A DNA stretch of 37,277 bases, taken from positions 1-37,277 of the forward strand of contig NIVC01003147.1 in assembly GCA_002269645.1 (NCBI GenBank). Reading direction: 5' to 3'. Of this stretch, positions 1-34,715 are shown piece after piece. Source of the stretch: Macrostomum lignano. Taxonomy: Eukaryota. The notes under the pieces were generated by a model. That model did not search any database. It was not told the DNA's origin and saw only the letters and a program-made list of their open reading frames with translations. A program made the position numbers and the translations under genes. Every line of letters starts with the position of its first letter. Within the stretch, counting starts at the first letter, position 1.

Positions 1-2317
1 CCGACTGTCTCTCCGTTCGAGACCAACAAGGAAGCACTCCCATCCATCTCGCTGCTGAGTTTCAGGGCGCCGATTCCATGCAGTTCTTCAAATCAGTCCT
101 CGGATCCGACTGCTTCCATCAGCCTGGCAATTGCCAACGCACTGCCATTCACCAAGCCGCTATGAATAAGAAGACTAACTCCTGTCTCAAGTGGCTGGTC
201 AACGAGTGCGGAACCGACTGTCTCTCCGTTCGAGACCAACAAGGAAACACTCCCGTCCATCTCGCTGCTTGGAAGCAGGGCGCCGATTCCATGCAGTTCT
301 TCAAATCAGTCCTCGGATCCGACTGCTTCCATCAGCCTGGCTACTTACAAGAAACTGCCATTCACTTGGCCGCTATGAATGAGACTAACTCCTGTCTCAA
401 GTGGCTGGTGAACGAGTGCGGAACCGACTGTCTCTCCGTTCGAGACCAACAAGGAGACACTCCCGTCCATCTCGCTGCTTGGAAGCAGGGCGCCGATTCC
501 ATGCAGTTCTTCAAATCAGTCCTCGGATCCGACTGCTTCCATCAGCCTGGCCGATTCCAACGCACTGCCATTCACTGTGCCGCTGAGAATGAAGCTACTA
601 ACTCCTGTCTCAAGTGGCTGGTGAACGAGTGCGGAACCGACTGTCTCTCCGTTCGAGACCAACAAGGAAACACTCCCGTCCATCTCGCTGCTTTCTGTCA
701 GGGCGCCGATTCCATGCAGTTCTTCAAATCAGTCCTCGGATCCGACTGCTTTCATCAGCCAGGCTGCGTACAACGCACTGCCATTCACTGGGCCGCTAGG
801 AATGAAGCTACTAACTCCTGTCTCAAGTGGCTGGTGAACGAGTGCGGAACCGACTGTCTCTCCGTTCGAGACCAACAAGGAAACACTCCCGTCCATCTCG
901 CTGCTTTGTTTCAGGGCGCCGATTCCATGCAGTTCTTCAAATCAGTCCTCGGATCCGACTGCTTCCATCAGCCTGGCCGATTCCAACGCACTGCCATTCA
1001 CTGTGCCGCTGAGAATGAAGCTACTAACTCCTGTCTCAAGTGGCTGGTGAACGAGTGCGGAACCGACTGTCTCTCCGTTCGAGACCAAGAAGGAGACACT
1101 CCCGTCCATCTCGCTGCTTTCTGTCAGGGCGCCGATTCCATGCAGTTCTTCAAATCAGTCCTCGGATCCGACTGCTTTCATCAGCCTGGCCGATTCCAAC
1201 GCACTGCCATTCACCAGGCCGCTATGAATGAGACTAACTCCTGTCTCAAGTGGCTGGTGAACGAGTGCGGAACCGACTGTCTCTCCGTTCGAGACCAACG
1301 AGGAAAGACTCCAGTCCATCTCGCTGCTTGGAAGCAGGGCGCCGATTCCATGCAGTTCTTCAAATCAGTGCTCGGATCCGACTGCTTCCATCAGCCTGGC
1401 TACTTACAAGAAACTGCCATTCACTTGGCCGCTATGAATGAGACTAACTCCTGTCTCAAGTGGCTGGTGAACGAGTGCGGAACCGACTGTCTCTCCGTTC
1501 GAGACCAACAAGGAAACACTCCCGTCCATCTCGCTGCTTTCTGTCAGGGCGCCGATTCCATGCAGTTCTTCAAATCAGTCCTCGGATCCGACTGCTTTCA
1601 TCAGCCAGGCTGCGTACAACGCACTGCCATTCACTGGGCCGCTAGGAATGAAGCTACTAACTCCTGTCTCAAGTGGCTGGTGAACGAGTGCGGAACCGAC
1701 TGTCTCTCCGTTCGAGACCAACGAGGAAACACTCCCGTCCATCTCGCTGCTTGGAAGCAGGGCGCCGATTCCATGCAGTTCTTCAAATCAGTCCTCGGAT
1801 CCGACTGCTTCCATCAGCCTGGCCGATTCCAACGCACTGCCATTCACTGTGCCGCTGAGAATGAAGCTACTAACTCCTGTCTCAAGTGGCTGGTGAACGA
1901 GTGCGGAACCGACTGTCTCTCCGTTCGAGACCAACAAGGAAACACTCCCGTCCATCTCGCTGCTTGGAAGCAGGGCGCCGATTCCATGCAGTTCTTCAAA
2001 TCAGTCCTCGGATCCGACTGCTTCCATCAGCCTGGCTACTTACAAGAAACTGCCATTCACTTGGCCGCTATGAATGAGACTAACTCCTGTCTCAAGTGGC
2101 TGGTGAACGAGTGCGGAACCGACTGTCTCTCCGTTCGAGACCAACAAGGAGACACTCCCGTCCATCTCGCTGCTTGGAAGCAGGGCGCCGATTCCATGCA
2201 GTTCTTCAAATCAGTCCTCGGATCCGACTGCTTCCATCAGCCTGGCCGACTCCAACGCACTGCCATTCACTGGGCCGCTAGGAATGAAGCTACTAACTCC
2301 TGTCTCAAGTGGCTGGT
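1..2317 (+). repeat. Coding tandem array of 210/213-nt units (70/71 aa, two ankyrin repeats each), about 11 units
   Basis: Alternating TPVHLAA and TAIHxAA ankyrin motifs on a near-invariant nucleotide scaffold. Confidence 0.95.
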
Positions 2318-3909
2318 TCAGCAACTCGGCCGGTCATGTCTTTTGAAACGAGGTTTTAACGGGATTACAGCGGCTCATCTGGCTGCTCAATATCAAGATG
2401 TCGAAACGCTCAGCTTCATCGTTGACTTACTGGGTGTCTCTGTCCTTGACCTACGGGATGCCTCGCACTTTCTTCCATGGAAGCGAAAGTCTGTTGCTGA
2501 CTACGCGAAGCTGAACTCTCGGCACGGGTCTCAGTTGACGCGGTGGATCGCTGAGCGGCGGCACCAGCAGAGGTCCCAGTCTGAGAAGACGCCGACAGTA
2601 CCGTAAGTTTTGTATGAAAAAAGCGGATATATTGGCACGTCTCTTATAGTGACATTAAAAATTGAATGCTGGATTTACGAGCTAATTAATAGCATTACAT
2701 TTTGAAAAAAAACTTTTTTGAACGAAGTCAAATCTTTTTTGTGGGCTGCATGCAATGCTCATAGAATATGATTTGCTTTGATTGGTTCTTAATTTTTATT
2801 TTCTTCAGAGATATAACAATGATCAGTTTAGGTTTAGTAAGGAAGAGATTATATATAATACAGTGTGCCCACAGCATTCCACGGCATCCCATAGCATTCT
2901 CGGGCAAAACTTCCCACAGAATCAGGCAAAGGTCTCCGGAGATTCTTGTTCTGCACTCATTGCTTCACACCCCGATCACCCTGCTGCATTCCAGACTCCA
3001 TGAGGATTTCTACCAGGTGACGAACCCGCAGGGATTCTGCCTCATCATCAACATCAACACGTACTCAACTGGCAGCGGCGAAGAGGAGCGCAAAGGCTCG
3101 GAGCGGGATGTGGACCGAGTGAGGAAGCTTTTCAGGAAGCTGAGTTTCACCATCAAGGAGGTGCAAAATCCCACAACTGCAGAGATCGATGACTTCCTCA
3201 ATGAGACAAAGAAGTCCAAGGAGCTCGCCAAGCACGGCAGTTTTGTCTGCTTCCTGATGGCCCACGGCCGCAAGGACCCACAGGGAAGGGACTGCATTAT
3301 CGATGGCCATGGAGTGCAGAGTCCGGTTCTGGAGCTCGCAGCCAAGTTCAAGGTGGGTCTGGTCTGGCTCATCTGTGCATATGATGCAAAGCATTGCAGC
3401 TCTACAAATTTCTACACATTTCCCAACCCTCCTCCAGGCCTCCGTCTGCCCCGACCTGGCGGGCAAGCCGAAGATCTTCTTTGTCCAGGCCTGCCGCGGC
3501 AGTGGCACAGACGAAGTGACGCACAGGGGACTGGCAGTCGACCAGCTGCCCCCAGAGTTCGCGCAGAACCCGGCCCTGTACCCGCCAGAGAGTGACTTCC
3601 TGTTCTGCTTCCCACCACAGAGGGTCAGGTGTCCTACCGCGACCCTCAGACTGGCAGCGTCTTCGTGCAGACCCTGTGCGACTACATCGAGCAATTTTAC
3701 ACAGAGAAGCACCTGGAGGACATCATGATTCTCGTGAAGCGGCACATGGCGGAGAAGCCGTGCGAGTTCAGAAACGAGAGAGGCGAACTTATAAAGTACT
3801 ATTGCGTTGCTCAGACCGTGTCACAGCTCGCTCGGCAGGTCTCCTTTGATCGAGCAAAGCTCAGAAGCGCTCACGGAGTCTGCAGCTGTTCAGCTTGGGT
3901 TCTCGTTGA
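3..3909 (+). CDS. Ankyrin-repeat caspase, paralog 1 (5'-truncated by window edge); join(<3..2602,2809..3352,3438..3909) with two 1-nt deletions versus paralog 2 in the last exon
   Basis: Frame is open from base 3 through >=23 ankyrin repeats. Donor CC|GTAAGT at 2603 and acceptor TTTCTTCAG| at 2808 join in frame to the caspase exon. Caspase motifs present: CLIINI, ERKGSERD, FLMAHG, KPKIFFVQACRG, DFL, VSYR. Missing T after 3613 and missing C near 3851 relative to paralog 2. Confidence 0.8.
2603..2808 (+). other. Intron 1 of paralog 1 (206 nt, phase 2) linking ankyrin exon to caspase exon
   Basis: GTAAGT donor, AT-rich body, TTTTATTTTCTTCAG acceptor. CC+A gives Pro, then DITMIS in the caspase frame. 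Confidence 0.85.
3353..3437 (+). other. Intron 2 of paralog 1 (85 nt, phase 0) within caspase p20
   Basis: AAG|GTGGGT ... CCTCCAG|GCC. Removal restores AAKFKASVCPDLAGKPKIFFVQACRG. Confidence 0.9.
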
Positions 3910-3994
3910 AAACATGTTGCAGAATCAGAGTGAAGTCTGTCATGTTATATTTGATGCTTATTAGCCACTTGTTAAGTTCTTGTCGTTTGATGTT

Positions 3995-5145
3995 GACTAC
4001 TTGATGCTTACTTGACTCTGCCTACTCTCTCATAACTGTGACCCCCAGTGACTACTTGATGCTTACTTGACTCTGCCTACTCTCTCATAACTGTGACCCC
4101 AGTGACTACTTGATGCTTACTTGACTCTGCCTACTCTCTCATAACTGTGACCCCAGTGACTACTTGATGCTTACTTGACTCTGCCTGCTCTCTCATAACT
4201 GTGACCCCCAGTGACTACTTGATGCTTACTTGACTCTGCCTACTCTCTCATAACTGTGACCCCAGTGACTACTTGATGCTTACTTGACTCTGCCTACTCT
4301 CTCATAACTGTGACCCCAGTGACTACTTGATGCTTACTTGACTCTGCCTACTCTCTCATAACTGTGACCCCAGTGACTACTTGATGCTTACTTGACTCTG
4401 CCTACTCTCTCATAACTGTGACCCCCAGTGACTACTTGATGCTTACTTGACTCTGCCTACTCTCTCATAACTGTGACCCCAGTGACTACTTGATGCTTAC
4501 TTGACTCTGCCTACTCTCTCATAACTGTGACCCCCAGTGACTACTTGATGCTTACTTGACTCTGCCTGCTCTCTTATAACTGTGACCCCAGAGACTACTT
4601 GATGCTTACTTGACTCTGCCTACTCTCTCATAACTGTGACCCCAGTGACTACTTGATGCTTACTTGACTCTGCCTACTCTCTCATAACTGTGACCCCCAG
4701 TGACTACTTGATGCTTACTTGACTCTGCCTACTCTCTCATAACTGTGACCCCCAGTGACTACTTGATGCTTACTTGACTCTGCCTGCTCTCTCATAACTG
4801 TGACCCCCAGTGACTACTTGATGCTTACTTGACTCTGCCTGCTCTCTTATAACTGTGACCCCAGAGACTACTTGATGCTTACTTGACTCTGCCTGCTCTC
4901 TTATAACTGTGACCCCAGTGACTACTTGATGCTTACTTGACTCTGCCTGCTCTCTTATAACTGTGACCCCAGAGACTACTTGATGCTTACTTGGCTCTGC
5001 CTGCTCTCTCATAACTGTGACCCCAGAGACTACTTGATGCTTACTTGACTCTGCCTGCTCTCTTATAACTGTGACCTCAGTGACTACTTGATGCTTACTT
5101 GACTCTGCCTACTCTCTCATAACTGTGAACCCAGAGACTACTTGA
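3995..5145. repeat. 54-55 bp minisatellite, about 21 copies
   Basis: Unit gactacttgatgcttacttgactctgcctactctctcataactgtgacccc(c)agt repeated head to tail with no spacers. Confidence 0.95.
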
Positions 5146-5639
5146 TTTTTTTCATCTACCTTTAGTTTTTCAGCTGATGGTACATATTATGTAGTGTTGC
5201 TACCGCATCTATTCAAGTTTTCATCTGCTCACTGTGCCTAAGTTACATTTTCAATTCCAATTGCAAGTCTCATTCTCAGCGCAAGACCAACTCCAAATAC
5301 ACAAATTAGAGCAGACTTTGCCGTCGCTACCAACAAAACTGAGAGCTGTTTTCTTAGAAACATGGATGCTGCCAGCTTCACTCAGAGACCGCCGAAATGA
5401 AAACGGGTTCGAGTCTAGGGAGGGAGGCGCAGAGAGACAATTGCGGCTTGAGAGCACAGGGTGCGGCTGTGCTCAGAGATTCGGTGCGGGGTGAAAGGCT
5501 GAGTATCTTCTCTCGCTGGCTGCAGCAGAGGCAACAATGATAAAAAGGCATCTAAACAGGCCAGGGCTGAGTCGCAGTGGCTGCCTATGCGACTCGATTG
5601 CAGCTCAACTCAAGCATGGAAGCCGTGCGAGACGCTTTT

Positions 5640-5698
5640 GTCTCTTTTTCTCTCTCTCTGTCTCTCTCCTTCTCTCCTCTCTCTCTCTGTCTCTCTCC

Positions 5699-5738
<40 letters not shown>

Positions 5739-6135
5739 CTCTCCTCTCTCTCTGTCTCTCTCCTTCTCTCCTCTCTCTGTCTGTCTCTCTCCTTCTCTCC
5801 TCTCTCTTTCTGTCTCGCTCCTTCTCTCCTCTCTCTCTCTGTCTCTCTCCTTCTCTCCTCTCTCTTTCTGTCTCGCTCCTTCTCTCCTCTCTCTCTCTGT
5901 CTCTCTTCTTCTCTCCTCTCTCTTTCTGTCTCTCTCCTTCTCTCCTCTCTCTCTCTGTCTCTCTCCTTCTCTCCTCTCTCTTTCTGTCTCGCTCCTTCTC
6001 TCCTCTCTCTCTGTCCCTCTCCTTCTCTCCTCTCTCTCCCTGTATCTCTCCTTCTCTCCCCTCTCTTTCTGTCTCGCTCCTTCTCTCCTCTCTCTCCCTG
6101 TCTCTCTCCTTCTCTCCTCTCTCTTTCTGTCTTCT
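5640..6135. repeat. CT-rich compound microsatellite
   Basis: ctctctccttctctcctctctct-type units, almost pure pyrimidine. Confidence 0.9.
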
Positions 6136-6221
6136 AACTTGACATTTGACAGGGTTTTTTCTGCAGTGGAGAAAAGAAGAATTAGCAATGCTCCTTGCCC
6201 TCATTGCTTTAGAATTAGCAA

Positions 6222-6740
6222 TGAAAGTCAGAGGGATTGGCATTGAGAGTCAGAGGGATTAACATTTAGAGTCAGAGGGATCGGGAATGAGAGTCAGAGG
6301 ATTGGCATTGAGAGTCAGAGAGATCGGGAATGAGAGTCAGAGGGATTGGCATTGAGAGTCAGAGAGATCGGGAATGAGAGTCAGAGGGATTGGCATTGAG
6401 AGTCAGAGAGATCGGGAATGAGAGTCAGAGGGATTGGCATTGAGAGTCAGAGAGATCGGGAATGAGAGTCAGAGGGATTGGCATTGAGAGTCAGAGAGAT
6501 CGGGAATGAGAGTCAGAGGGATTGGCATTGAGAGTCAGAGAGATCGGGAATGAGAGTCAGAGGATTGGCATTGAGAGTCAGAGAGGATTGGCATTGAGAG
6601 TCAGAGAGGATTGGCATTGAGAGTCAGAGAGGATTGGCATTGAGAGTTAGAGAGGATTGGCATTGAGAGTTAGAGAGATCGGGAATGAGAGTCAGAGAGG
6701 ATTGGCATTGAGAGTTAGAGAGATCGGGAATGAGAGTCAG
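6222..6740. repeat. 22-bp minisatellite with alternating A/B variants (44-bp higher order in its centre)
   Basis: gagagtcagagggattggcatt alternating with gagagtcagagagatcgggaat. Confidence 0.9.
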
Positions 6741-7442
6741 GTGAACTGATGCACTGGAAGTCACTATACGAGTATACTGTCCTAAAACTTGCTCAAGCCC
6801 TTTGAAGCAGAGCTGAGAAAGAGCGGTGAAACTGGAGGCGAGTAAAGTTGAGACGCAGATGCAGAGAAGACACCCTGCAAAAGCATTTGAGTTGAAACGA
6901 ATCCAAAATAATGATATTTTTGTTGTCAAGCGAGGGCTTTGACCCCGCCACCCCTCATTGCAGTTTATTCAAGTGGCCAGGACTGCCGCAGTAAAATGCT
7001 CTGGAAGGGGGGCGCGTCGGTTGCTAAAAACAGAGGGCTTGGGGTCTGTTTTCTTAGAAACGAAGCTGCATCTCTGTCATACAACCCGAAGCCACCCCCT
7101 ACCGTCCGAAGCTTTTTCTGCTGCTCAGCTGCCTCTGTGCTCAAAGCCTGCAGGGGCGGTGAGGTTGGTTGACTGTTCTCAACTCAGTGAAAAGAAAATG
7201 AGCATTCGAGTGTCTGTGAAGCTGAGCCCCAGCCCAGACCGAGAACGGCAATGACGCGTGACGCACTCCTAACTCCGATGCTGAGATTTAGAAGATTTTT
7301 TCAGGAAATTTAAAGTAACTTTTCCGCTTATGGCTACTGAAAGTAACTTTAAAGCATTTCACATGCTCCTGAAATGCAAGCAGCAGGCAGATGTGTAAGA
7401 AATCTGACACTGTGAGTGTACTTCAGAAGTCTGTGAATCTGC

Positions 7443-7830
7443 GTGATACTGTGTGATACTTTGTGATACTGTGTGAGACTGTGTGAGACTGTGTGATACT
7501 GTGTGATACTGTGTGATACTGTGTGAGACTGTGTGAGACTGTGTGATACTGTGTGATACTGTGTGATACTGTGTGAGACTTTGTGATACTTTGTGAGACT
7601 GTGTGATACTGTGTGATACTGTGTGAGACTGTGTGATACTGTGTGATACTGTGTGATACTTTGTGATACTGTGTGAGACTGTGTGAGACTGTGTGATACT
7701 GTGTGATACTGTGTGATACTGTGTGAGACTTTGTGATACTTTGTGAGACTGTGTGATACTGTGAGATACTGTGTAAGACTGTGTATGACTCTGTGATACT
7801 GTGTGATACTGTGCGAGACTCTGTGACAAA
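7443..7830. repeat. 10-bp tandem repeat
   Basis: ctgtgtgata / ctgtgtgaga units. Confidence 0.9.
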
Positions 7831-8289
7831 TGTGTGATGACTGTCTGTGAGACTGCGATACCGTGTGAGTGTTTGTAAAGAATGTCTGTGTGAGAATGGA
7901 TAAATTGTATGAAATTACTGATTCACTCGCGCGACAATGTGAATAAGGGGAGCCTTATCAAGCAGATCCATCTAGAAAAATTGTAATTTTTTAAACAGAA
8001 ATCGTCTGGAAACTTTAGAACTAATAAAACTGGCCTATATTAATCTTACACTGCTTGCAAGAAACCTAAAACGACATTAGAAGGTGAATAGACCCCCCTG
8101 ACTCGAGAGGGGCGTGTTTCGCAACTTCAAATATTACAAGCTCATAAATTCATCAGCTGCAATATCGAAAAAGTCACGAGTTTCATGTCTCTTGAGGCTG
8201 GCCTCGCTACACCTCGCAGCAACTTCGCGAAAAAGCAACACTTTTAGTCGGCATGCAACTTCACGCGCAAGTCATCAGCAACATCCTCA

Positions 8290-9329: not shown

Positions 9330-10716
9330 TTTCAAAAAAGAAATAACAAAAACTGGATTTAATTAGTATACGCTTCACCAAAAAGACTGGGGCGCCGTCA
9401 AAGTTCAGGCTGTCCTCGTCAGTATTGTGCAGTTGCGCCGCTGGTTGCAGTTGAGGTGCTGCAGCTGGACTGGCTGTGTTGCATGCGCGCCCCGCAGTTC
9501 TCGGCCGAAATGCATCCCCGAAGGTGTCTGACCAATAGACTTGTGGACTGAAGTGCGGTAGCCCATCAGTGCAATCTGCAGATAAAGATCCCAGTCTCGC
9601 TGATTCTCGTTTACTCATGCTCGCAACAGCTGCACCAGCGTCCGGTTCATCCATTCACAACCGCCGTCTCCTTCAGGGTGGTAGCCTGTCGTCCGAGTCT
9701 TGTCGATTTTCAGCAGCCGCATCGTCTCTTGAAACAGCTGCGACTCCCAGTTCCGAGCCTGGTCGGTGTGCACCGACTGCGGGACTCCGAAGGGACACAC
9801 ATTGGCAGGATGCTACAGTTCACCAGCACGTTAGCACCAGTGGCTGAGCAGGACACCTCCACCACTGGGTGCACTGAGATTTTCACTTGCGGAACGGCAC
9901 CCCGGCGGTCGCCGCTCCACCGAAGTTTCCTGATTTCTGAGTGCAAAATCTTTGAACATGGCCCGGCCTACCGCACTTCCAGTATGTCACAACTCTGCGT
10001 CTGTCGCCACTCTCACAATGATCCTGGTCCTTTGTCTCCCAGCGATTGAGCTTGTTGGACAGCTCCTGCAGAGACCGTTGAATTTCGAATGCAAAGGCTT
10101 CGGGAACCTCAGCAGCTAGATCCGTAGCGGCGCCTCCTTGCGACTGTATAGATTCCACGAATCGCGCTGTTTCCACCGCATCAGCGAATTTCGCCTTTGG
10201 CTGCATCTGCATCTGCATCTGCATTTGCACAACTGGGTCCCTCAATCCGGATAGAAACCGACCTTAGAGCAGCTCGTCCTTCGCTGTCACTGACGTCTCC
10301 TGCTTTCGTCTCCACCAACTCGGGAAAGCGCGCTTTGCCGCAACAATCAGAGCATCGGAATAGTCTGCAACCAACTGACCGTCCTTTTGAGTCAGATTGA
10401 AGAACTGCGCCTGCAGCTCAGCAGATGATGTCGATGGCCGAAATCGATTTTTCAGAGCCTTCTCAAAGCCGTTCTGGGACAGGGCAGCATCTAAATTGCT
10501 GGCCGCTTGATATGATTTATCGTCGAGGAATGACAGCAGAGCATTCTTGCGCTGATCCACTGGAAGATGCAAAATTGTTGAATCGTGCCAGCCAACGCTC
10601 AAAGTCCTGTCCAGCTGGTATTGAGGCGGCCGCTAAAACATGTTGACAAAACTAGCTTGGGGCTGGGCTACTGCTACTGCAGCTCTCTGCACTTGAGCTG
10701 CCTTCATTTTCATTAA

Positions 10717-12454: not shown

Positions 12455-15302
12455 ATGGAGCCGCGAGCCTCAATACGCGCATTGGTAGCTGCAGCACTCG
12501 CTGCCAAGGACCTGGACAGCCTCCTCGATCTCTGCTGGCAGCTCGACACCAACCATACCGTCAGCGTCAACCAGTTGGAGCAGTCCATTGCTCACCACGT
12601 GGCCTGCCTTCCCGACGGTCTAAGCTGCATGGAGGCTCTCATTGAGAAACTCGGAACCAAATGCCTCACCTGCACCAACGAGAAGATGAACACTCCAGTG
12701 CACCTGGCTGCCTTGTATCTAGATGAGTCATGGATGGAGCTCATTCACCGAAACCTCGGATGCGACTGCTTCCAGCAGCCTGGCTACATAAAACGCACTG
12801 CCATTCACTGTGCCGCTACGAATGAAAAAACTAACTCCTGTCTCAAGTGGCTGGTGAACGAGTGCGGAACCGACTGTCTCTCCGTTCGAGACCAAGATGG
12901 AGACACTCCCGTCCATCTCGCTGCTTGGAAGCAGGGCGCCGATTCCATGCAGTTCTTCAAATCAGTCCTCGGATCCGACTGCTTCCATCAGCCTGGCCGA
13001 CTCCAACGCACTGCCATTCACCAGGCCGCTATGAATGAAGCTACTAACTCCTGTCTCAAGTGGCTGGTGAACGAGTGCGGAACCGACTGTCTCTCCGTTC
13101 GAGACCAACAAGGAAACACTCCCGTCCATCTCGCTGCTTGGATGCAGGGCGCCGATTCCATGCAGTTCTTCAAATCAGTCCTCGGATCCGACTGCTTTCA
13201 TCAGCCAGGCTGCGTACAACGCACTGCCATTCACTGGGCCGCTAGGAATGAAGCTACTAACTCCTGTCTCAAGTGGCTGGTGAACGAGTTCGGAACCGAC
13301 TGTCTCTCCGTTCGAGACCAACGAGGAAAGACTCCAGTCCATCTCGCTGCTTGGAAGCAGGGCGCCGATTCCATGCAGTTCTTCAAATCAGTCCTCGGAT
13401 CCGACTGCTTCCATCAGCCTGGCCGACTCCAACGCACTGCCATTCACTGGGCCGCTTTGAATGAGACTAACTCCTGTCTCAAGTGGCTGGTGAACGAGTG
13501 CGGAACCGACTGTCTCTCCGTTCGAGACCAACAAGGAAACACTCCCGTCCATCTCGCTGCTTGGAAGCAGGACGCCGATTCAATGCAGTTCTTCAAATCA
13601 GTCCTCGGATCCGACTGCTTCCATCAGCCTGGCAATTGCCAACGCACTGCCATTCACTGGGCCGCTTTTAATGAAGCTACTAACTCCTGTCTCAAGTGGC
13701 TCGTTCAGCAACTCGACCGGTCATGTCTTTTGAAAAGAGGTTTTAACGGGATTACAGCGGCTCATGTGGCTGCTCAATATCAAGATGTCGAAACGCTCAG
13801 CTTCATCGTTGACTTACTGGGTGTCTCTGTCCTTGATCTAAGGGATGCTTCGCACTTTCTTCCATGGAAGCGAAAGTCTGTTGCTGACTACGCGAAGCTG
13901 AACTCTCAGCACGGGTCTCAGTTGACGCGGTGGATCGCTGAGCGGCGGCACCAGCAGAGGTCCCAGTCTGAGAAGACGCCGACAGTACCGTAAGTTTTGT
14001 ATGAAAAAAGCGGATATATTGGCACGTCTGTTACAGTGACATTAAAAATTGAATGCTGGATTTACGAGCTAATTAATAGCATTAAATTTTGAAGAAAAAA
14101 AAGATTTTTAAATGAAGTCAAAGCTTTTTTGTGGGCTGCATGCAATGCTCATAGAATATGATTTGCTTTGATTGGTTCTTAATTTTTATTTTCTTCAGAG
14201 ATATAACAATGATCAGTTTAGGTTTAGTAAGGAAGAGATTATATATAATACAGTGTGCCCACAGCATTCCACGGCATCCCATAGCATTCTCGGGCAAAAC
14301 TTCCCACAGAATCAGGCAAAGGTCTCCGGAGATTCCTGTTCTGCACTCATTGCTTCACACCCCGATCACACTGCTGCATTCCAGACTCCATGAGGATATT
14401 TACCAGGTGACGAACCCGCAGGGATTCTGCCTCATCATCAACATCAACACGTACTCAGCCGGCAGTGGCGAAGAGGAGCGCAAAGGCTCGGAGCGGGATG
14501 TGGACCGAGTGAGGAAGCTTTTCAGGAAGCTGAGTTTCACCATCAAGGAGGTGCAAAATCCCACAACTGCAGAGATCGATGACTTCCTCAATGAGACAAA
14601 GAAGTCCAAGGAGCTCGCCAAGCACGGCAGTTTTGTCTGCTTCCTGATGGCCCACGGCCGCAAGGACCCACAGGGAAGGGACTGCATTATCGATGGCCAT
14701 GGAGTGCAGAGTCCGGTTCTGGAGCTCGCAGCCAAGTTCAAGGTGGGTCTGGGTCTGGCTCATCTGTGCATATGATACAAAGCATTGCAGCTCTACAAAT
14801 TTCTACACATTTCCCAACCCTCCTCCAGGCCTCCGTCTGCCCCGACCTGGCGGGCAAGCCGAAGATCTTCTTTGTCCAGGCCTGCCGTGGCAGTGGCACA
14901 GACGAAGTGACGCACAGGGGGCTGGCAGTCGACCAGCTGCCCCCAGAGTTCGCACAGAACCCGGCCCTGTACCCTCCAGAGAGTGACTTCCTGTTCTGCT
15001 TCCCTACCACAGAGGGTCAGGTGTCCTACCGCGACCCTCAGACTGGCAGCGTCTTCGTGCAGACCCTGTGCGACTACATCGAGCAATTTTACACGGAGAA
15101 GCACCTGGAGGACATCATGATTCTCGTGAGGCGGCACATGGCGGAGAAGCCGTACGAGTTCAGAAATGAGAGAGGCGAACTTATAAAGTACTATTGCGTT
15201 GCTCAGACCGTGTCACAGCTCGCTCGGCAGGTCTCCTTTGATCCGAGCAAAGCTCAGAAGCGCTCACGGAGTCTGCAGCTGTTCAGCTTGGGTTCTCATT
15301 GA
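12455..15302 (+). CDS. Ankyrin-repeat caspase, paralog 2, intact; join(12455..13989,14199..14742,14829..15302), 850 aa
   Basis: About 12 ankyrin repeats (degenerate N-cap, 5 A/B pairs, C-cap). The same two GT-AG introns as paralog 1. Spliced length 2553 nt is in frame to TGA. His-Gly (AHG), QACRG, and S1-pocket Arg residues (RKGS, SYR) are retained. Confidence 0.88.
12690..13705 (+). repeat. Coding di-ankyrin array of paralog 2 (about 5 units)
   Basis: Same 210/213-nt scaffold as 1-2317. Confidence 0.95.
13990..14198 (+). other. Intron 1 of paralog 2 (209 nt, phase 2)
   Basis: CC|GTAAGT ... TTCTTCAG|A. Differs from the paralog 1 intron by small indels while the flanking exons keep frame. 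Confidence 0.85.
14743..14828 (+). other. Intron 2 of paralog 2 (86 nt, phase 0)
   Basis: AAG|GTGGGT ... CCTCCAG|GCC. 1 nt longer than in paralog 1, consistent with non-coding status. Confidence 0.9.
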
Positions 15303-15377: not shown

Positions 15378-15518
15378 GACTACTTAATGTTCACTTGACC
15401 CCGTCTGCTCCCTCATAACTGTGGCCTTCAGTAACTACTTGTTCGCTTGACCCCTGCCAGCTCCCTCATAACTGTAACCCCAGAGACTACTGATTTTCAC
15501 CTGACTCTTGCCTGCTCA
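15378..15518. repeat. Two to three degenerate units homologous to the 54-55 bp minisatellite
   Basis: gactactt...cacttgacccc...ctccctcataactgt(g/a)...cag at the position equivalent to the array after paralog 1. Confidence 0.65.
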
Positions 15519-17829: not shown

Positions 17830-18981
17830 ATGCAGACTAAAGTAAATCCAACACGGACAGGCAATAGCAGGAGTCTCCCTGGCAGCCGGCTGCCATTGCT
17901 GCTGCTGCTTGTCCTGCTTGCCGTCTTCCTCTGCCTGAGCTCCTACGCCCCGAAGCTCAGCATCTACCAAATCAGCTTCCCGGTCTTCAACACGGATGAC
18001 GACTTCGCCGACTCCTTCGCCCGAGTGCTGCAGCGTCAGCAGTCGGGCCGCTGCCTTCACGAGTTCAACTCCAGCCTGAAGCTGCCACTGCTGCGACTCG
18101 ACTCACCAGCCGAGCTGGACCCGAAGATTCGAACCCGGGCCGCCGCGGCCTGGCTGCGCTCGTCTGTCGACGTAGTGTTCGCCGCCTCGGTGCGCAACGC
18201 CATGCGCGGACTGCCCGGCACCGCCCAGCAGATGCGGCGCCTCGCCGACAGCTTCCGCAGCGTCGCCTTCGTCTTCGTGGAGAACGACAGCGCGGACGAT
18301 ACGAGGCGCTTCCTGACCGACTGGCGCCGACGAGACGCCCGGGTGCGCCTGCTGGGTTGCGGGGGCGCCGACGCCGCGTGCCGCATGAACATCAGCTACT
18401 CCTCCGGCCGCGCCCACCGCCAGGGCTGGTCGCTGCCGCGCAACCAAGTCGAGAACCGCGAGCGCGGCATCGTGATGTCCGCCCTGAGGAACATCTACCT
18501 GCGCCACATCTACCGGCAGCTCTACAGACCCGACCGCGACTCCCTGCTCATCGTTGTGGATCCCGATCTCAGCTTCAAGCCGTGGGACCTGGACGCCATC
18601 CTGCAGGGCCTGTACTACTTCCGGGACAGGCCGGAGCTGCAGTCTCTGTGCGCCCACACCACGTCTCATGACGTCATCTACGACAACTGCACCCTGGTGT
18701 TCCAGCGCACCAGGCTGTTCTCCCAGGTCAGCCGCGAATCGACGATCGTCTCCGATTTCAACACGACGGCTCAGCCGCCCGGCCTGCCGCCCGTGAAGGT
18801 GGCCGGCTGCTTCCAGGCCTTCACCGCCTACCGATTGAGCCACCTGGCCGAACAGAAGCTCGAGTACGGACCGGCCCGAGGTGAGACCGTCTGCGAGCAC
18901 CTGACGCTGGCCAGACAGCTGATGGAGAACTACCTGGACCTGGGCAAGGAGGTTGTCAAGGAGAACGAGGGTGGTTTGTGA
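17830..18981 (+). CDS. Intronless type II membrane GT-A fold glycosyltransferase-like protein, copy A (383 aa)
   Basis: N-terminal hydrophobic anchor LLLLLVLLAVFLCL; FVENDSADDT; MSALRNIYL; DxD motif VVDPDL; VAGCFQAFTAY; CEH. High GC3. Confidence 0.8.
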   Translation: MQTKVNPTRTGNSRSLPGSRLPLLLLLVLLAVFLCLSSYAPKLSIYQISFPVFNTDDDFADSFARVLQRQQSGRCLHEFNSSLKLPLLRLDSPAELDPKIRTRAAAAWLRSSVDVVFAASVRNAMRGLPGTAQQMRRLADSFRSVAFVFVENDSADDTRRFLTDWRRRDARVRLLGCGGADAACRMNISYSSGRAHRQGWSLPRNQVENRERGIVMSALRNIYLRHIYRQLYRPDRDSLLIVVDPDLSFKPWDLDAILQGLYYFRDRPELQSLCAHTTSHDVIYDNCTLVFQRTRLFSQVSRESTIVSDFNTTAQPPGLPPVKVAGCFQAFTAYRLSHLAEQKLEYGPARGETVCEHLTLARQLMENYLDLGKEVVKENEGGL

Positions 18982-20237: not shown

Positions 20238-21416
20238 TCACGCATTGCCCTCGTTCTGCTTGACAACCTGCAGCTGCATGCCCAGGTCCAGGTAGTTCTC
20301 CGTCAGCTGTCTGGCCAGCGTCAGGTGCTCGCAGACGGTCTCCCCGCGTACTGGTCCGTACTCGAGCTTCTGTTTGGCCAGGTGGCTCAGTCGGTAAGCG
20401 GTGAAGGCCTGGAAGCAGCCGGCCACCTTCAGAGGTGGCAGGCCGGGCGGCGGCGACTTGGTGCGAAAGGCAGCGATGATCGGCGACTCCTTGCCGGCCT
20501 GGGAGAAGAACCCGTTCTGCTGGAACACCAGGGTGCACGGGTCGTAAATGTAACTGCCGTACCTGGTGTGGGCGCACAGGGACTGCAGCTCCGGCCTGTC
20601 CCGGAAGTAGTACAGGCCCTGCAGGATGGCGTCCAGGTCCCACGGCTTGAAGCTGAGATCGGGATCCACAACGATGAGCAGGGAGTCGCGGTCGGGTCTG
20701 TAGAGCTGCCGGTAGATGTGGCGCAGGTAGATGTTCCTCAGGGCGGACATCACGATGCCGCGCTCGCGGTTCTCGACTTGGTTGCGCGGCAGCGACTAGC
20801 CCTGGCGGTGGGCGCGGCCGGAGGAGTAGCTGATGTTCATGCGGCACGCGGCGTCGGCGCCCCCGCAACCCAGCAGGCGCACCCGGGGGTCTCGTCGGCG
20901 CCAGTCGGTCAGGAAGCGCCTCGTATCGTCCGCGCTGTCGTTCTCCACGAAGACGAAGGCGGCGCTGCGGAAGCTGTCGGCGAGGCGCCGCATCTGCTGG
21001 GCGGTGCCGGGCAGTCCGCGCATGGCGTTGCGCACCGAGGCGGCGAACACTACGTCGACAGACGAGCGCAGCCAGGCCGCGGCGGCCCGGGTTCGACTCT
21101 TCGGGTCCAGCTCGGCCGGTGAGTCGAGTCGCAGCAGTGGCATCTTCAGGCTGGAGTTGAACTCGTGAAGGCAGCGGCCCGACCGCTGACGCTCCAGCAC
21201 TCGGGCGAAGGAGTGGGCGAAGTCGTCATCCGTGTCGGGGAAGCTTCTAGCTGAGTATCGCGTGCTCAAACCCGAATAGATGACGCTTGAGCTCTGCAGA
21301 CAGATGTAGGCAAAAAGCATCCCGGACAAAAGCAGCAACACCTGCACCTGCAGCAGCGGCCTGCGGTTGCTCGAGAACCGTCTTGCACACGAACATGTAG
21401 CAGGGGGTCCGGGCAT
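20238..21416 (-). pseudogene. Glycosyltransferase-like copy B, inverted paralog, with one in-frame TAG (Trp to stop) at 20796-20798
   Basis: ORFs 20796..21416 and 20238..20753 share a frame. CAG GGC TAG TCG aligns to CAG GGC TGG TCG in copy A. Confidence 0.8.
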
Positions 21417-25898: not shown

Positions 25899-26564
25899 TT
25901 TTATGAAAGCGTCCATAAAGTTTGGGAGCTTCACAATTCCAACCCTCTCTCTGGTGGGGCTTCACAAGACCAAAACTTCATGAGACGGGAATTTCACAAA
26001 GTTAAAAATTCTGTATGGTCCTTGCTAAATTAAGTTTTCTATGGTGTGAAGTTCGGTCTATTCCCGTCTGGCTCAACCCCACGAGTGGATGTAGAAAGCC
26101 CCATGCCCAGCCTAGGCAGGATCCTGATTCACCGATTCACAGAAAAGAAAAGCTTAACTCGAAAAAAGTAATACCCATTCTGGGGTATCAATGGGCAAAA
26201 TAGTACCCCAAATCAGTTGGCTAATACCCCATGGGGTACTAATTGGGGTAAAAAACCATTGTTCGAACCAAAAGAAAAGGTTGCCTCTTTGGGCGCTAGA
26301 TTCACTTCTATTTATACTAAAATGAGGGGGGGGGGGTAAAGAAGCGCAAACAAAAAATAGAGAACCGTGAATACCTGGAAACTGCTGGGAATTCAAAATT
26401 GGCTCTCTCTCAATCCCTCACCCACCTTCATCATCCCTCACACAGCCTTATTACTCTCACCCAGCTTCATCACCCCACCAACTTAATCAACCCCCAAAAC
26501 CAACTTCATCATCCCACCACCCAGCTTCATCATGTCTCACTTAAAGAATCCGAGCCCAACTCAC

Positions 26565-28553
26565 CAGTCGAACCCGCAGCTCGGCGCTCCGGTACCGGGA
26601 CGTGTCCAGGGCCTGCAGGGCTTTCGCCGCGTTGGCCGCCGAGTCCATTGTGACGAATGCAAAGATGGCCGGCACCTCCGACTTCTTGCTGCCAACGATC
26701 TTGACGTTGACAACCCGGCCGTAGGCTGAGCACAGCTCCTTTGCGTCCGTGGCCTTCGTGCCCGGCGGTAGGCCGGCGATCCACAGGTGCCGCGTCTCCG
26801 CCTGGCCGCCTGCTGACCCCGCAGCCGCCGCTGCTTCAGTTGAGTCGGCAGCCTGAGTTCGAATCCGCTTCACGTCGGCGCCATCGCCCGGGTCGTCGGA
26901 GGGCGGCGGCGGCCGCTTTGCTGCAGTCTCGCCGGCCTCGGGCGGAGGCGGCGGAGGAGGCGGCGGCGGCGGAGACTCGGGAGGCGGCGGCGGCGGTGGC
27001 GGCTGCTGCTGCGAGGTCGGCACATTGACGCCGAGAGTGGGAAAGACGAACGGCTGCGTCTTGGCCGCGGCGGCGGTGGTGGCCGTGGTGGCAGAATTCG
27101 CCGAGACGGCAGCTGCGGCAGCGGCGGAGGCAGCAGCGGCGGCGGCAGCGTACTGGTACTGGGCCGCAGCGGGGGTCTGCTGCACCTGATACAGCTGGGT
27201 GTACAGGCCGCTCAGCTGGGCCAGCTCAGCCGGCGTGGCGGCTCCAGCGGCGGCCTTGGCGTAGAGCTGGCAGGCCAGCTGGTACACCGCGGCCGGGTCG
27301 CTGGGCTGGGCGGCGGCTTCTGGGACCGCGGGCTGCTGTGGCGCCAAGCTGGACGGCGCCGACAAGAGGCCAAGGCCCGATGATACGGCGGAGGTCGGCG
27401 GTGCGGCAGCGACGGTGGCAGCGGCGCAGGCAGGCGAGAGCTCAGCGGCAACGTGAGGCGAGGAGACGGCCGCCATGCCGGCGCCAGGACCGAGCAAGCC
27501 GAGCGACTTGGCGCCAGCGTGCGCGGCCAGGGTGGGCGGGTTGGGCAGCAGAGTTTTGCGCGGCCGCGACTGCTGCTCCCGCAACAGCTGGCCGACCATG
27601 TGGGCCATGGACTCCAACTGCAGGCGGGTCTCGGGCGGCAGCGTCATGGCCAGCAGGCGGCTCAGCGTCTCCTGCATGGCGGCCAGCGCCAGAGAGTGAT
27701 TGGCGCCGGGCGCGCGCTGGATTCGCTCTAGCGAGGCCATGAGGCCCTCCATAACGGCCGGGATGTTGGCCTTGCTGTAGTTCCGCTGCGCCTCCGCCTC
27801 CTGCAGCATGGCCTGCTGCTGCTGCAGCTCCTCAGCTGTTGGCGAGGCGGCGGCCTGCTGCGAGTGCTGGCGCAGCTGGTGCAGCGCGGCATCGATGCCG
27901 ATGCCGTTGCTAGGCAACGGGCCATCAGACGGCTGGGCTTCCTCGGCCTCCTCAGCCGCTTGCTGCTGCTGGGCCCGCCGCTGCCGACGGCGCCGCTCCC
28001 GCTTGAGCCGATTGCGGCGCTTGCGCAGCTTCTTGACGGCCTTGTCGTCCGCCTCGGCCAAGCCCGGAGGGTCCGGCATCCGCTCCAGCAGCTCGTCGTC
28101 CGTGTCGAAGTCGTCCACGGTGTTGCACGGGTGGCGCCGCTGGCACACGGGGCACTCCACCATCGCCGAGGTCTTCTTGCGCCCGCCCGGCTCACCGTCT
28201 GAGTCCGGCTCCTCGTCGCTGCAGTAGAAGGCGCGCGCCTCGGCGCAGTCCCGGTCGATGACGTCACCGCACGGCAGGCGGATTGGCCAGCGGATCGGCT
28301 CCTGGCAACAGGCGCAGCGGTACTCGTCTGGTACCGAGGCAGCCGCCGCCGCTGCCGCAGCCGCCGCAGCAGCCGCGCTGTCGACAAACTCTGGTGTCAT
28401 CTTCGGCGGCTGCGGGTAGCTCGCGCCGCTGTTTGACTTTTGGGCGGCCGCCACCGGCTGCTTCTTCGGCTGGGGCGGCGGCGGTGGCGGCGGCACGTCG
28501 TCGACGTCGGAGTCGACAATTTCGCCTTCCTCCACTGCGTCGTTTGCCAGCAT
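26565..28553 (-). CDS. Main exon of a protein with variant RING finger, basic coiled segment, Ala/Pro/Gln low-complexity region and C-terminal SAFB/SLTM-type RRM
   Basis: ATG at 28553 in GCCGCCAATG context. CACC-x11-CGDVIDRDC-x30-CPVC; KKLRKRRNRLKRERRRRQRR; RRM HLWIAGLPPGTKATDAKELCSAYGRVVNVKIV...FAFVTM. Donor CTG|GTGAGT at 26564. Confidence 0.8.
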
Positions 28554-28599
28554 TGGCGGCTGCTGCGGGGTTTGCAATAGACAATGACTAAATTAAAGA

Positions 28600-33537: not shown

Positions 33538-33866
33538 TACCTTGCCCCTATTGGAATAAGTTGACAAAATGCAGATGACCGTCCGTCGCATTTTTGGATT
33601 CTCCTGGTGTCGCGTCGCGCGACAGTGGTGTCAAGTGGTGTGTCGCGTCGCGCGACACTGTGGAAACTTGGTGTCATCATGCATTGTGTCGCGCGACACG
33701 ATACAACGAGACACGAAAGTGTGGCAACTTGGTGGCTGGTGTCGTCATGTGTCGCGTTGCAGCCTAGATCTGCAGCCAAAACCTCGCAAACTGTGTTTCA
33801 TTGTAATAATATGTTCACGGTTGTTTCTCGGTATTTAAATGTTTCAAACATGTTTGATAAAAACTA

Positions 33867-34715
33867 TGTGAAGTCTGGGTTTGCGTGCCGAAAAGGTGGC
33901 CTCTGTATGGCTCTGTTTACTCAATATATTAGTCAATATTGTGGGGTGGGGTGCAGCGATGCGCGATTGGTCGAGAATTGGTAAACAAGTTTAGGCGAGA
34001 GAATGAGTCATGAATAATAATGTGGGGCAGAGAGTGCAGCGCACGGCCTACGCCCTACATCCTTCCCCAGGTGAATAAAAATTCAGGGAGATAAAAACAA
34101 AATTAAGTCAAATCTCACTACATTAAAACAAGCAAGCATTCGGCGGCTGCGTAGAGGCGCTGTGTCCAGGCGTCCAGTGACTCGCCAGTTTGCTGCGTGC
34201 AGTGCCGGAATTCATACCTGACAAACACAGGGTTGTGCCTGTCGCTGTAGTGAGTCCTGAATGCCTCAATCAGATCGTCAAGAGACTTTCCAGTTCTATT
34301 CAGCTCTTTGAATGTGTCCGCCAGCTGCTTGCCGCCTACGTAGAGAAGAATTTCGCGCTGCTGGTCGGCACTTGTGATGCCACTGGCTGTGACAAACCTT
34401 TTGAAACGGCCGGACCACTCCTCCCACTTTGCTGAGAGATTGTGTTGTTCTGCCTGTTCGTTAAACTGCTCAGGCGGGGGTAGCTGCAGAGGCACAGACA
34501 TTCTGACTGCTTGCGATGCCAATGTGAAGTCTGGGTTTGCGTGCCGAAAAGGTGGCCTCTGTATGGCTCTGTTTACTCAATATATTAGTCAATATTGTGG
34601 GGTGGGGTGCAGCGATGCGCGATTGGTCGAGAATTGGTAAACAAGTTTAGGCGAGAGAATGAGTCATGAATAATAATGTGGGGCAGAGAGTGCAGCGCAT
34701 GGCCTACGCCCTACA
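33867..34715 (-). mobile_element. Miniature LTR retrotransposon (TRIM-like), 849 bp
   Basis: 193-bp LTRs 33867-34059 and 34523-34715 (TG..CA, 1 mismatch). 5-bp TSD AACTA. TGG-starting PBS after the 5' LTR and PPT GGGGAAGGA before the 3' LTR. Confidence 0.92.
34118..34501 (-). CDS. Truncated retrotransposon Gag (N-terminal part, 127 aa)
   Basis: WEEWSGRFKRFVTASGIT...LLYVGG...RYEFRHCTQQTGESLDAWTQRL is a gypsy-type Gag pattern. It lies inside the mini-LTR element. Confidence 0.75.
   Translation of the reverse strand: MSVPLQLPPPEQFNEQAEQHNLSAKWEEWSGRFKRFVTASGITSADQQREILLYVGGKQLADTFKELNRTGKSLDDLIEAFRTHYSDRHNPVFVRYEFRHCTQQTGESLDAWTQRLYAAAECLLVLM

What the first reader, a model, noticed from the sequence alone, without database searches (positions are those of the whole stretch)
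12455..15302. Hidden ankyrin-caspase fusion: an ankyrin array replaces the CARD/DED prodomain
The ORF track shows separate ankyrin and caspase ORFs. However, the ankyrin 'stop' (CCG TAA) is the donor CC|GTAAGT, which splices in frame to the caspase exon in both paralogs. Seen: one 850-aa chain with ankyrin repeats, linker, p20 (AHG, QACRG), an Asp-containing linker (GTDE, LAVD) and p10 (SYR). Established: initiator caspases normally use death-fold prodomains and activate by induced proximity. Inference: ligand binding to the ankyrin array could cluster and activate the protease directly, giving a one-piece sensor-effector. I do not recognise this architecture as a characterised family.
Basis: partly seen in the sequence, partly recalled or inferred. 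Interest (0 to 1): 0.9.

Follow-up and report, generated by a model that had tools for sequence, protein, structure and literature searches.

The report
Ankyrin-prodomain caspase of a flatworm
This is a real flatworm (Macrostomum lignano) gene, already annotated, that joins a long ankyrin-repeat array to a caspase protease; such 'ANK caspases' are already described in parasitic flatworms, so it is a new example of a known kind, and its hypervariable repeats hint at a sensor role.

Summary
The window is the whole 37,277-bp contig NIVC01003147.1 of the Macrostomum lignano genome. The ankyrin ORF (12455-13993) and the caspase ORFs belong to one gene, and the ORF's stop codon does overlap the donor CC|GTAAGT. 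The acceptor CTGCTGCATTCCAG| is conserved in diverged paralogues.

The caspase domain is intact, with His602, Cys650 in QACRG, and the S1 residues Arg544, Gln648 and Arg699. Paralogue A (1-3909) has two 1-bp deletions that destroy p10.

The architecture is not new. 'ANK caspases' were described in platyhelminths (Genome Biol Evol 2024), though that paper says free-living species lack them. M. lignano carries at least seven diverged Ank+caspase lineages. They do not group with the parasite clade in my crude tests.

What I add: the 71-residue ankyrin cassettes have a nearly invariant framework and are hypervariable at canonical ankyrin contact positions. This fits variable ligand recognition. 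A one-piece sensor-protease remains an inference.

The parts
12455..13989 (+). Gene B (BOX15_Mlig014209g1), exon 1. It encodes an N-terminal helical cap, the ankyrin array, a C-terminal cap and the linker up to codon 512 (CC-).
   Evidence: The ORF and sequence are. Pfam finds Ank_2 at 1.8e-40. The translation is identical to P0137 residues 1-512.
12754..13701 (+). Tandem array of 213-bp (71-aa, two-ankyrin) cassettes, 4.5 copies at 92% identity. Positions 7, 9, 17, 18, 41, 42, 49 and 52 of each cassette are hypervariable.
   Evidence: Tandem Repeats Finder and the cassette alignment with pN/pS.
13990..14384 (+). Intron 1 (phase 2), GTAAGT...CTGCTGCATTCCAG. The ankyrin ORF's TAA (13991-13993) lies inside the donor.
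   Evidence: Annotated proteins join TVP|LHED. The acceptor motif is conserved in L003 and L004.
14190..14199 (+). It is in frame but no annotated model uses it, and it is absent from paralogue L003.
14385..14742 (+). Exon 2: conserved LHEDIYQVTNPQG junction motif and most of p20 (Arg544, His602 in AHG).
   Evidence: tblastn of P0001 and P0003 starts at 14386.
14743..14828 (+). Intron 2 (phase 0), GTGGGT...CTCCAG, between ...AAKFK and ASVCPDL.
   Evidence: The same position is split in L003 and L004.
14829..15302 (+). Exon 3: QACRG (Cys650), intersubunit linker with Asp656 and Asp666, p10 with SYR (Arg699), stop TGA at 15300-15302.
   Evidence: In the AlphaFold2 model the linker 656-681 is disordered and the flanking caspase core has pLDDT 81-97.
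1..2602 (+). Paralogue A, exon 1, cut by the contig end. It holds at least 10.9 ankyrin cassettes and the same donor at 2602/2603.
2995..3909 (+). Paralogue A caspase part: exon 2 at 2995-3352 and exon 3 at 3438-3909. Single-base deletions after 3613 and 3850 shift the frame before p10. The annotated product ends at 3728.
   Evidence: Four-copy alignment and gene calls.

Best explanation
Gene B is an intact, transcribed caspase of Macrostomum lignano. Its prodomain is a 512-residue ankyrin solenoid instead of a CARD or DED. It has three exons (12455-13989, 14385-14742, 14829-15302) and encodes 788 aa.

Shown:
- The fusion is real.
- The catalytic dyad and the Asp-binding S1 pocket are intact.
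- The two Asp residues in the intersubunit linker lie in a segment predicted to be disordered.
- The gene belongs to a large M. lignano-specific expansion of Ank-caspases.
- The ankyrin part is built from nearly identical 71-aa cassettes that differ almost only at canonical ankyrin target-contact positions. Cassette types are reshuffled and vary in copy number between copies.

Inferred:
- The array is a variable recognition surface for protein ligands (self adaptors or non-self molecules).
- Binding of a multivalent ligand or platform brings zymogens together.
- The caspase domain dimerises and cuts itself at Asp656 and/or Asp666, and possibly at the mostly conserved Asp516 just before the caspase core (LHED|IY), which would release the array.
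- The active protease then cleaves after Asp in death or immune substrates.

My confidence that the gene is a real ANK-prodomain caspase is about 0.9. My confidence in the sensor and induced-proximity mechanism is about 0.35.
For: Gene structure:
- The contig's GenBank model P0137 (788 aa) is identical to my three-exon translation.
- That annotation derives from RNA-seq assemblies that were cut at experimentally found trans-splice and poly(A) sites (PMC5730564). It was not cut between the ankyrin and caspase parts.
- The junction and acceptor motif are conserved in L003 (Mlig013715) and L004 (Mlig019701, about 47% identity in the caspase domain).

Caspase domain:
- Peptidase_C14 scores 8.4e-43, and the best PDB hits are caspase-3/7 at 1e-31 to 1e-28.
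- His602 is invariant and Arg544, Gln648, Cys650 and Arg699 are nearly invariant (90% or more) in a 30-sequence alignment.
- The AlphaFold2 caspase core has pLDDT 81-97, and the linker 656-681 has pLDDT below 50.

Family:
- Pfam confirms Ank + Peptidase_C14 in P0145, P0151, P0153, P0210, P0237 and P0267, and Ank + kinase + caspase in P0171.
- All of these are M. lignano proteins.

Cassettes:
- There are 8 hypervariable positions among 71. Six of them fall in the 12 a-priori ankyrin contact positions (hypergeometric P = 1.5e-4).
- pN/pS is 1.88 at those a-priori positions against 0.60 elsewhere, over 21 cassettes.
- Copy number differs: at least 10.9 cassettes in copy A against 4.5 in copy B, and one cassette fewer in the syntenic copy L001 (3 registered cassettes against 4).
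- An acidic motif ending in Asp precedes the caspase core in most paralogues.
Against: - I could inspect no junction-spanning reads. Several copies are at least 95% identical, so expression of this particular copy is not proven.
- Two of the three near-identical copies (A and L001) are disrupted. That may mean relaxed selection on this subfamily, or assembly errors.
- pN/pS on recombining tandem cassettes is not a formal test of positive selection. Relaxed constraint at surface positions would look similar.
- The ankyrin part of the AlphaFold2 model has low confidence (pLDDT 50-66).
- The catalytic domain cannot be assigned to the initiator or the executioner type. Profile scores are 141 bits for caspase-3/7 and 126 bits for caspase-8. 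Activation by dimerisation rather than by upstream cleavage is therefore open.
- No ligand, substrate or phenotype is known.
Confidence: 0.6

Rival explanations
1. The ankyrin array is an adaptor-docking prodomain. It does not sense anything itself. Like a DED or CARD, it recruits the zymogen to a dedicated, still unknown endogenous activator or scaffold. The Genome Biol Evol 2024 authors proposed this for parasite ANK caspases.
For: PMC11463336 suggests an unidentified activator for ANK caspases. Ankyrin-repeat proteins are known to bind caspases, for example zebrafish Caiap, which binds active Caspa through its ANK domain (PMC5662874). Platyhelminths lack FADD, and the parasitic species also lack DED caspases, so a replacement recruitment module is plausible.
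Against: A single conserved partner would not predict hypervariability focused on contact positions, reshuffled cassettes, or copy-number differences between near-identical copies.
Confidence: 0.25
2. The gene encodes an executioner-type caspase. An upstream caspase (the CARD caspase with Apaf-1) activates it by cutting the linker, and the ankyrin array only targets the enzyme to substrates or to a cell compartment.
For: The catalytic domain scores best against caspase-3/7 profiles and structures. The intersubunit linker is short and carries Asp sites.
Against: The preference for the caspase-3/7 profile over the caspase-8 profile is small (141 against 126 bits), and other family members prefer caspase-8. 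As far as I know, long prodomains typically mark apical caspases.
Confidence: 0.2
3. The locus makes two separate products. One is an ankyrin-only protein that ends at the TAA in a retained or polyadenylated intron 1. The other is a stand-alone caspase that starts inside intron 1 (ATG at 14209, after the acceptor-like site at 14199, possibly a spliced-leader trans-splice site).
For: The intron is open in the exon-2 frame for 76 codons upstream of 14385. A strong polypyrimidine-AG lies at 14198 and is followed by an ATG. ATTAAA motifs lie at about 14040 and 14080. M. lignano trans-splices 38.8% of its genes. P0002 starts 7 residues upstream of the acceptor.
Against: The transcript-based annotation keeps one fused CDS on this contig and in paralogues. 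The stretch is not conserved as coding in L003, which has indels and a stop. The fusion is kept in at least seven diverged lineages.
Confidence: 0.08
4. The first reader's 850-aa isoform (13989^14199) is the main product.
For: It is in frame, and its acceptor has the better polypyrimidine tract.
Against: No annotated protein contains the 62 extra residues. Paralogues have a short linker that starts at the conserved [ED][ED]D-F-Y motif. The acceptor is absent from L003.
Confidence: 0.05
5. This subfamily is decaying, and gene B is a recently duplicated copy with no maintained function.
For: Copy A has two frameshifts, and the syntenic copy L001 has a TGC>TGA nonsense change before QACRG.
Against: B and L003 are intact over 788 and 722 codons with all catalytic residues. 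Framework positions of the cassettes show purifying selection, with pN/pS of 0.37-0.60. The disruptions may be PacBio indel errors.
Confidence: 0.07

Closest known systems
ANK caspases of parasitic platyhelminths (Neodermata), e.g. Taenia solium KAL5963490.1, Cichlidogyrus casuarinus KAL3319427.1 and Schistosoma spp. (described in PMC11463336; first noted by Lee et al. 2014 as cited there)
   Same: The architecture and the phylum are the same: N-terminal ankyrin repeats, a linker, then a p20/p10 caspase domain with QACRG (Pfam on P0260 and P0236). Their function is equally unknown.
   Different: - The parasite proteins form their own clade next to caspase-8 and prefer a caspase-8 profile by 30-60 bits.
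- The M. lignano proteins form a separate clade with no special affinity for the parasite profile.
- The parasite ankyrin regions are short and degenerate and are followed by a linker of about 200 aa. Here the array is long, tandemly repeated and hypervariable, with a short linker.
- The paper states that free-living flatworms lack ANK caspases.
M. lignano 'protein-kinase pro-domain' caspase (Mlig018903, PAA47029.1), reported in PMC11463336
   Same: It comes from the same species and the same caspase clade in my tree. It also carries N-terminal ankyrin repeats (Ank_2 1.7e-23).
   Different: It has a Ser/Thr kinase domain inserted between the ankyrin repeats and the caspase. It has no tandem 71-aa cassettes.
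Initiator caspases with death-fold prodomains (caspase-8/-10 with DED, caspase-2/-9 with CARD)
   Same: They have a long N-terminal protein-interaction prodomain followed by a caspase domain with an Asp-containing intersubunit linker. The induced-proximity model is the obvious analogy (established knowledge).
   Different: No DED or CARD is detected here. An ankyrin solenoid has no known homotypic polymerisation mode like that of death folds.
Effector caspases-3/-7
   Same: They give the best structural-database and profile matches, at about 30-34% identity, with the same catalytic and S1 residues.
   Different: Effector caspases have prodomains of about 25-30 residues, against 512 here. The margin of the caspase-3/7 profile over the caspase-8 profile is small.
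Caiap (CARD + 16 ANK) of fish to marsupials
   Same: It is an ankyrin array that physically engages a caspase in an immune pathway (PMC5662874). It is a functional analogy, acting in trans.
   Different: It is a separate adaptor protein with no protease domain, and it is unrelated in sequence.

Membership tests
Caspases (peptidase family C14A) | Significant match to the caspase domain model over both p20 and p10 | tested here: met
   Pfam PF00656 scores 147 bits (cut-off 21.4) over residues 587-800 of the 850-aa model. The best PDB hits are caspase-3/7 at E of about 1e-31. The AlphaFold2 core has pLDDT 81-97.
Caspases (peptidase family C14A) | Catalytic His (xHG) and Cys (QACxG) | tested here: met
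   His602 lies in MAHG and Cys650 in QACRG. His602 is invariant and Cys650 nearly invariant in alignment A3.
Caspases (peptidase family C14A) | S1 pocket Arg/Gln/Arg that confers Asp specificity | tested here: met
   Arg544, Gln648 and Arg699 (the R of SYR) align with the corresponding caspase-3/7 residues. They are nearly invariant in alignments A1 and A3.
Caspases (peptidase family C14A) | Asp-directed proteolytic activity and autoprocessing in the intersubunit linker | not testable with these tools
   Asp656 (SGTD) and Asp666 (LAVD) lie in a segment predicted to be disordered. Cleavage itself was not shown.
Platyhelminth ANK caspases (sensu PMC11463336) | Ankyrin repeats as the pro-domain, N-terminal to p20/p10, in one polypeptide | tested here: met
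   Pfam finds Ank_2 at 1.8e-40 together with Peptidase_C14. The fused 788-aa CDS is annotated on this contig.
Platyhelminth ANK caspases (sensu PMC11463336) | Membership of the monophyletic clade sister to DED caspases | tested here: not met
   In the NJ tree the M. lignano clade and the neodermatan clade are separate, each with bootstrap 100, and the neodermatan clade sits next to caspase-8. Gene B scores 141 bits against the caspase-3/7 profile, 126 against caspase-8 and 130 against the neodermatan profile. These are crude methods, and an ML tree is still needed.
Platyhelminth ANK caspases (sensu PMC11463336) | Restriction to parasitic species | tested here: not met
   M. lignano is free-living. 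At least seven Ank+caspase lineages are present in it.
Death-fold initiator caspases | CARD or DED pro-domain | tested here: not met
   No PF00619 or PF01335 hit at E <= 0.01.
Effector caspases-3/-7 | Short pro-domain and a constitutive dimer activated by upstream cleavage | tested here: not met
   The pro-domain is 512 aa. The oligomeric state cannot be tested here.

The most novel reading that the evidence does not exclude
M. lignano has independently evolved a family of one-piece cytosolic sensor-executioner proteins. A cassette-shuffled, hypervariable ankyrin array recognises diverse (possibly non-self) ligands directly and switches on its own caspase domain. This would be a repeat-based innate immune or cell-death receptor that needs no NLR/Apaf-like platform or death-fold adaptor. 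It would have arisen separately from the parasite ANK caspases.
Probability: 0.2. Interest if true: 0.75.

Novelty: new member of a known kind. Interest (0 to 1): 0.38.

Why it matters
It corrects a published generalisation. ANK-prodomain caspases are not confined to parasitic flatworms: the free-living model M. lignano has a large expansion of them, including the 'kinase' caspase, which also carries ankyrin repeats.

If the M. lignano and neodermatan families arose separately, ankyrin-caspase fusion has happened at least three times in Lophotrochozoa, counting the annelid case in the paper. That would point to a recurring solution after FADD and the DED machinery were lost.

Variability at the contact surface and cassette reshuffling make these genes candidates for recognition receptors coupled directly to a death protease. 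M. lignano has transgenesis and RNAi, so this can be tested.

Tried and rejected
I built it (850 aa) and rejected it as the main form.
- Orthology with the neodermatan ANK caspases. I looked for it with a neodermatan profile search, an NJ tree with 100 bootstraps and profile-versus-profile scoring. I found no support, but the methods are crude.
- Classification as effector or initiator type. It was inconclusive.
- The locus of P0007 is not on record.
- Searching papers for the gene IDs Mlig014209, Mlig020959, Mlig013715, Mlig019701, Mlig009377 and Mlig000705 gave 0 hits.
- No supplementary tables of PMC11463336 are held, so I could not see whether PAA53038.1 was in their dataset.
- The structure search against PDB failed. 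The job was lost and then the model was gone, so I have no fold-level comparison.
- The AlphaFold2 model of the ankyrin part is too uncertain (pLDDT 50-66) to map the hypervariable residues in 3D.
- The pN/pS on columns chosen for their variability is circular. I replaced it with a-priori contact positions.
Full report
**Origin of the window**

The best protein matches are all from Macrostomum lignano, a free-living flatworm. One member of the best-matching cluster, P0137 (PAA53038.1, BOX15_Mlig014209g1, UniProt A0A267DUT8, 788 aa), sits on a contig of exactly 37,277 bp. A look-up places it on NIVC01003147.1 of assembly GCA_002269645.1. The window is therefore that whole contig.

**The observation**

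- ORF 12455..13993 encodes 512 aa of ankyrin repeats and ends in CCG TAA. The G and the TAA are part of a consensus donor CC|GTAAGT.
- Downstream ORFs encode a caspase: Pfam Peptidase_C14 at 8.4e-43, and best solved relatives caspase-3/7 at about 1e-31.
- A second intron (14743..14828, GTGGGT...CCAG) separates ...AAKFK from ASVCPDL...QACRG.

**The acceptor is a different one**

- The GenBank product of this very contig (P0137) is identical to exon 1 (12455-13989) + 14385-14742 + 14829-15302, which is 788 aa.
- P0001, P0003 and P0142 read the same way...EKTPTVP|LHED[IF]YQVTNPQG. tblastn puts the second block at 14386.
- In the more diverged paralogue Mlig013715 (L003), the acceptor CTGCTGCATTCCAG|ACTCC is conserved.
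- The same 14-nt acceptor motif precedes HEEDFYPVTNPQG in Mlig019701 (L004), whose caspase domain is only about 47% identical.
- In all close paralogues the linker is short, and conservation starts at the [ED][ED]D-[FI]-Y-x-V-T-x-P-Q-G motif, exactly at 14385.
- I conclude that 14199..14384 is intron.
- A minor isoform, or an internal start at ATG 14209 (possibly trans-spliced), cannot be excluded without reads. In copies A and B the intron is open in frame for 76 codons.

**Is the fusion real?**

- The GenBank annotation comes from genome-guided RNA-seq assemblies (StringTie/TACO plus a mapped de novo transcriptome). These were cut into genes only where trans-splice or poly(A) evidence existed (PMC5730564). 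The model was not cut between the ankyrin part and the caspase.
- Independently, Ank + Peptidase_C14 is kept in many diverged M. lignano proteins: Mlig019701, Mlig000705/009621, Mlig009377, Mlig001045, Mlig006436/011129, P0267, P0007 and P0024/P0144. There is also an Ank + kinase + caspase form (Mlig018903, Mlig030125).
- The intron between the two parts, and the intron inside the caspase domain, lie at homologous positions in L003 and L004.
- A chimeric gene model is therefore excluded.

**State of the copies**

- Copy A (1-3909) is about 97.6% identical to B outside the repeats.
- Copy A lacks one base after 3613 and one after 3850, relative to B, L001 and L003. The first deletion shifts the frame before TTEGQVSYR, so p10 is lost. 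The annotated product of A ends at 3728.
- The syntenic copy on NIVC01000874.1 (L001, 96-99% identical) has TGC>TGA right after KFKASV. This explains the truncated 564-aa P0003.
- Only B among these three copies is intact. L003 is intact as well.
- The assembly is PacBio-based and redundant, so some of these lesions may be errors.

**Anatomy of the protein**

- The caspase domain keeps His602 (AHG), Cys650 (QACRG) and the S1 residues Arg544, Gln648 and Arg699.
- AlphaFold2 gives pLDDT 81-97 for the core. The intersubunit linker 656-681, which holds Asp656 (SGTD) and Asp666 (LAVD), is disordered.
- An Asp (LHED516|I) directly precedes the core and is conserved in most paralogues. It may be a pro-domain removal site; this is an inference.
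- The ankyrin part of B contains 4.5 tandem cassettes of 213 bp, and A contains at least 10.9. Each cassette is two ankyrin repeats.
- Across 18-21 cassettes from A, B, L001 and L003 the framework is almost invariant. Eight positions (7, 9, 17, 18, 41, 42, 49, 52) are hypervariable.
- Six of the eight fall among the 12 positions that correspond to the classical ankyrin contact sites (repeat positions 2, 3, 5, 13, 14 and 33). That mapping rests on my own knowledge of designed ankyrin repeat proteins. The overlap has hypergeometric P = 1.5e-4.
- At those a-priori positions pN/pS is 1.88, against 0.60 elsewhere.
- Cassette types (YLQE, RFQR, CVQR, NCQR, RLQR) recur in different orders in A and B. 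This indicates unequal crossing-over or conversion.
- The pattern fits a diversifying recognition surface. It is not a formal test of selection.

**Comparison with what is known**

- According to that paper they form a clade sister to DED caspases, were first seen in Schistosoma, are restricted to parasitic platyhelminths (plus one annelid), and are absent from free-living flatworms.
- For M. lignano the paper reports only a kinase-prodomain caspase.
- My data show that M. lignano has many Ank-caspases, and that the 'kinase' caspase also has ankyrin repeats.
- A profile built from neodermatan proteins (Taenia solium, Cichlidogyrus) retrieves cestode and schistosome relatives and then caspase-8. 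A profile built from the M. lignano proteins and their more distant caspase relatives (alignment A1) retrieves caspase-3/7.
- In an NJ tree (236 columns, 100 bootstraps) the M. lignano proteins, together with LRAT-caspases and some sponge and ENA sequences, form one clade. The neodermatan proteins form another clade beside caspase-8. Each has bootstrap 100.
- In profile scoring the neodermatan proteins prefer caspase-8 by 30-60 bits. Gene B scores 141 (caspase-3/7), 126 (caspase-8) and 130 (neodermatan) bits.
- So gene B shares the architecture but, on these crude tests, not the clade. An independent fusion is plausible but not proven.

**Mechanism**

- Shown: one polypeptide, an intact Asp-specific active site, a flexible Asp-bearing linker, and a variable ankyrin surface.
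- Inferred: the array binds ligands or a platform, proximity drives dimerisation and autocleavage, and the array may be shed at Asp516.
- Rivals are adaptor docking to one endogenous activator, an effector caspase with a targeting array, two separate products, and a decaying subfamily. Their weights are given in the rival explanations.

**Verdict**

The acceptor is wrong, one of the two copies is broken, and the novelty claim is overstated. It is a new member of a known kind, in a species where the kind was said to be absent. The cassette hypervariability is an observation worth following up.

Noticed in passing
window 3613/3614 and 3850/3851; L001 about 10175: Copy A has two 1-bp deletions in the p10 exon. 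The syntenic copy Mlig020959 has a TGC>TGA nonsense change just before QACRG. Only gene B of the three near-identical copies is intact. These may be pseudogenes or assembly errors.
   Followed up: yes
window 14371-14384, 2981-2994; L003 4898-4911; L004 6942-6955: The last 14 nt of intron 1 (CTGCTGCATTCCAG) are identical even between paralogues whose caspase domains are only about 47% identical. In A and B the intron is also open in the exon frame for 76 codons. The reason is unknown.
   Followed up: partly
L003 about 4369-4376: The paralogue Mlig013715 seems to use a non-canonical GC donor (AG|GCAGGC), where gene B has CC|GTAAGT.
   Followed up: no
window 3994-5146, 5649-6132, 6214-6740, 7439-7844; also about 15390-15480: Several satellite arrays lie between the two caspase genes: a 54-bp unit x21, a CT-rich 29-bp unit, a 22/44-bp unit and a 10-bp unit. 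The 54-bp unit starts right after the 3' end of copy A, and one or two similar units follow gene B.
   Followed up: no
window 17830-18981 (+) and 20238-21416 (-): An annotated 383-aa gene has no solid Pfam hit (weak CAP59_mtransfer, E = 0.006). An inverted, about 93% identical, apparently fragmented duplicate lies 1.3 kb downstream. Local GC is 57-66%.
   Followed up: partly
window 26541-28577 (-): A 678-aa ORF lies in a segment of up to 72% GC. It has a C-terminal RRM (7e-9), long Ala, Pro and Gln tracts and a Cys-rich N-terminal part. It is annotated as a 677-aa gene.
   Followed up: partly
window 9883-10602 (-), 34118-34522 (-), 29000-37277: There are retrotransposon gag-like fragments (weak Retrotrans_gag hits, and a CCHC knuckle in 9883-10245). 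A very AT-rich 8-kb tail (GC 0.21-0.36, apart from a 1-kb stretch of 0.46 at 34-35 kb) contrasts with the rest of the contig.
   Followed up: partly
P0009/P0011 (Mlig004795), P0171/P0231, P0149-P0157: M. lignano also has caspases fused to an LRAT/NlpC-like domain (PF04970) and to Ank + protein kinase. Several top database hits from other taxa carry two to five tandem caspase domains.
   Followed up: partly
P0014 (Oopsacas minuta, 539 aa), P0010/P0012/P0015/P0019 (ENA): Sponge and unnamed ENA caspases have an N-terminal region of about 290 aa with no Pfam hit. They group with the M. lignano clade in the NJ tree.
   Followed up: no
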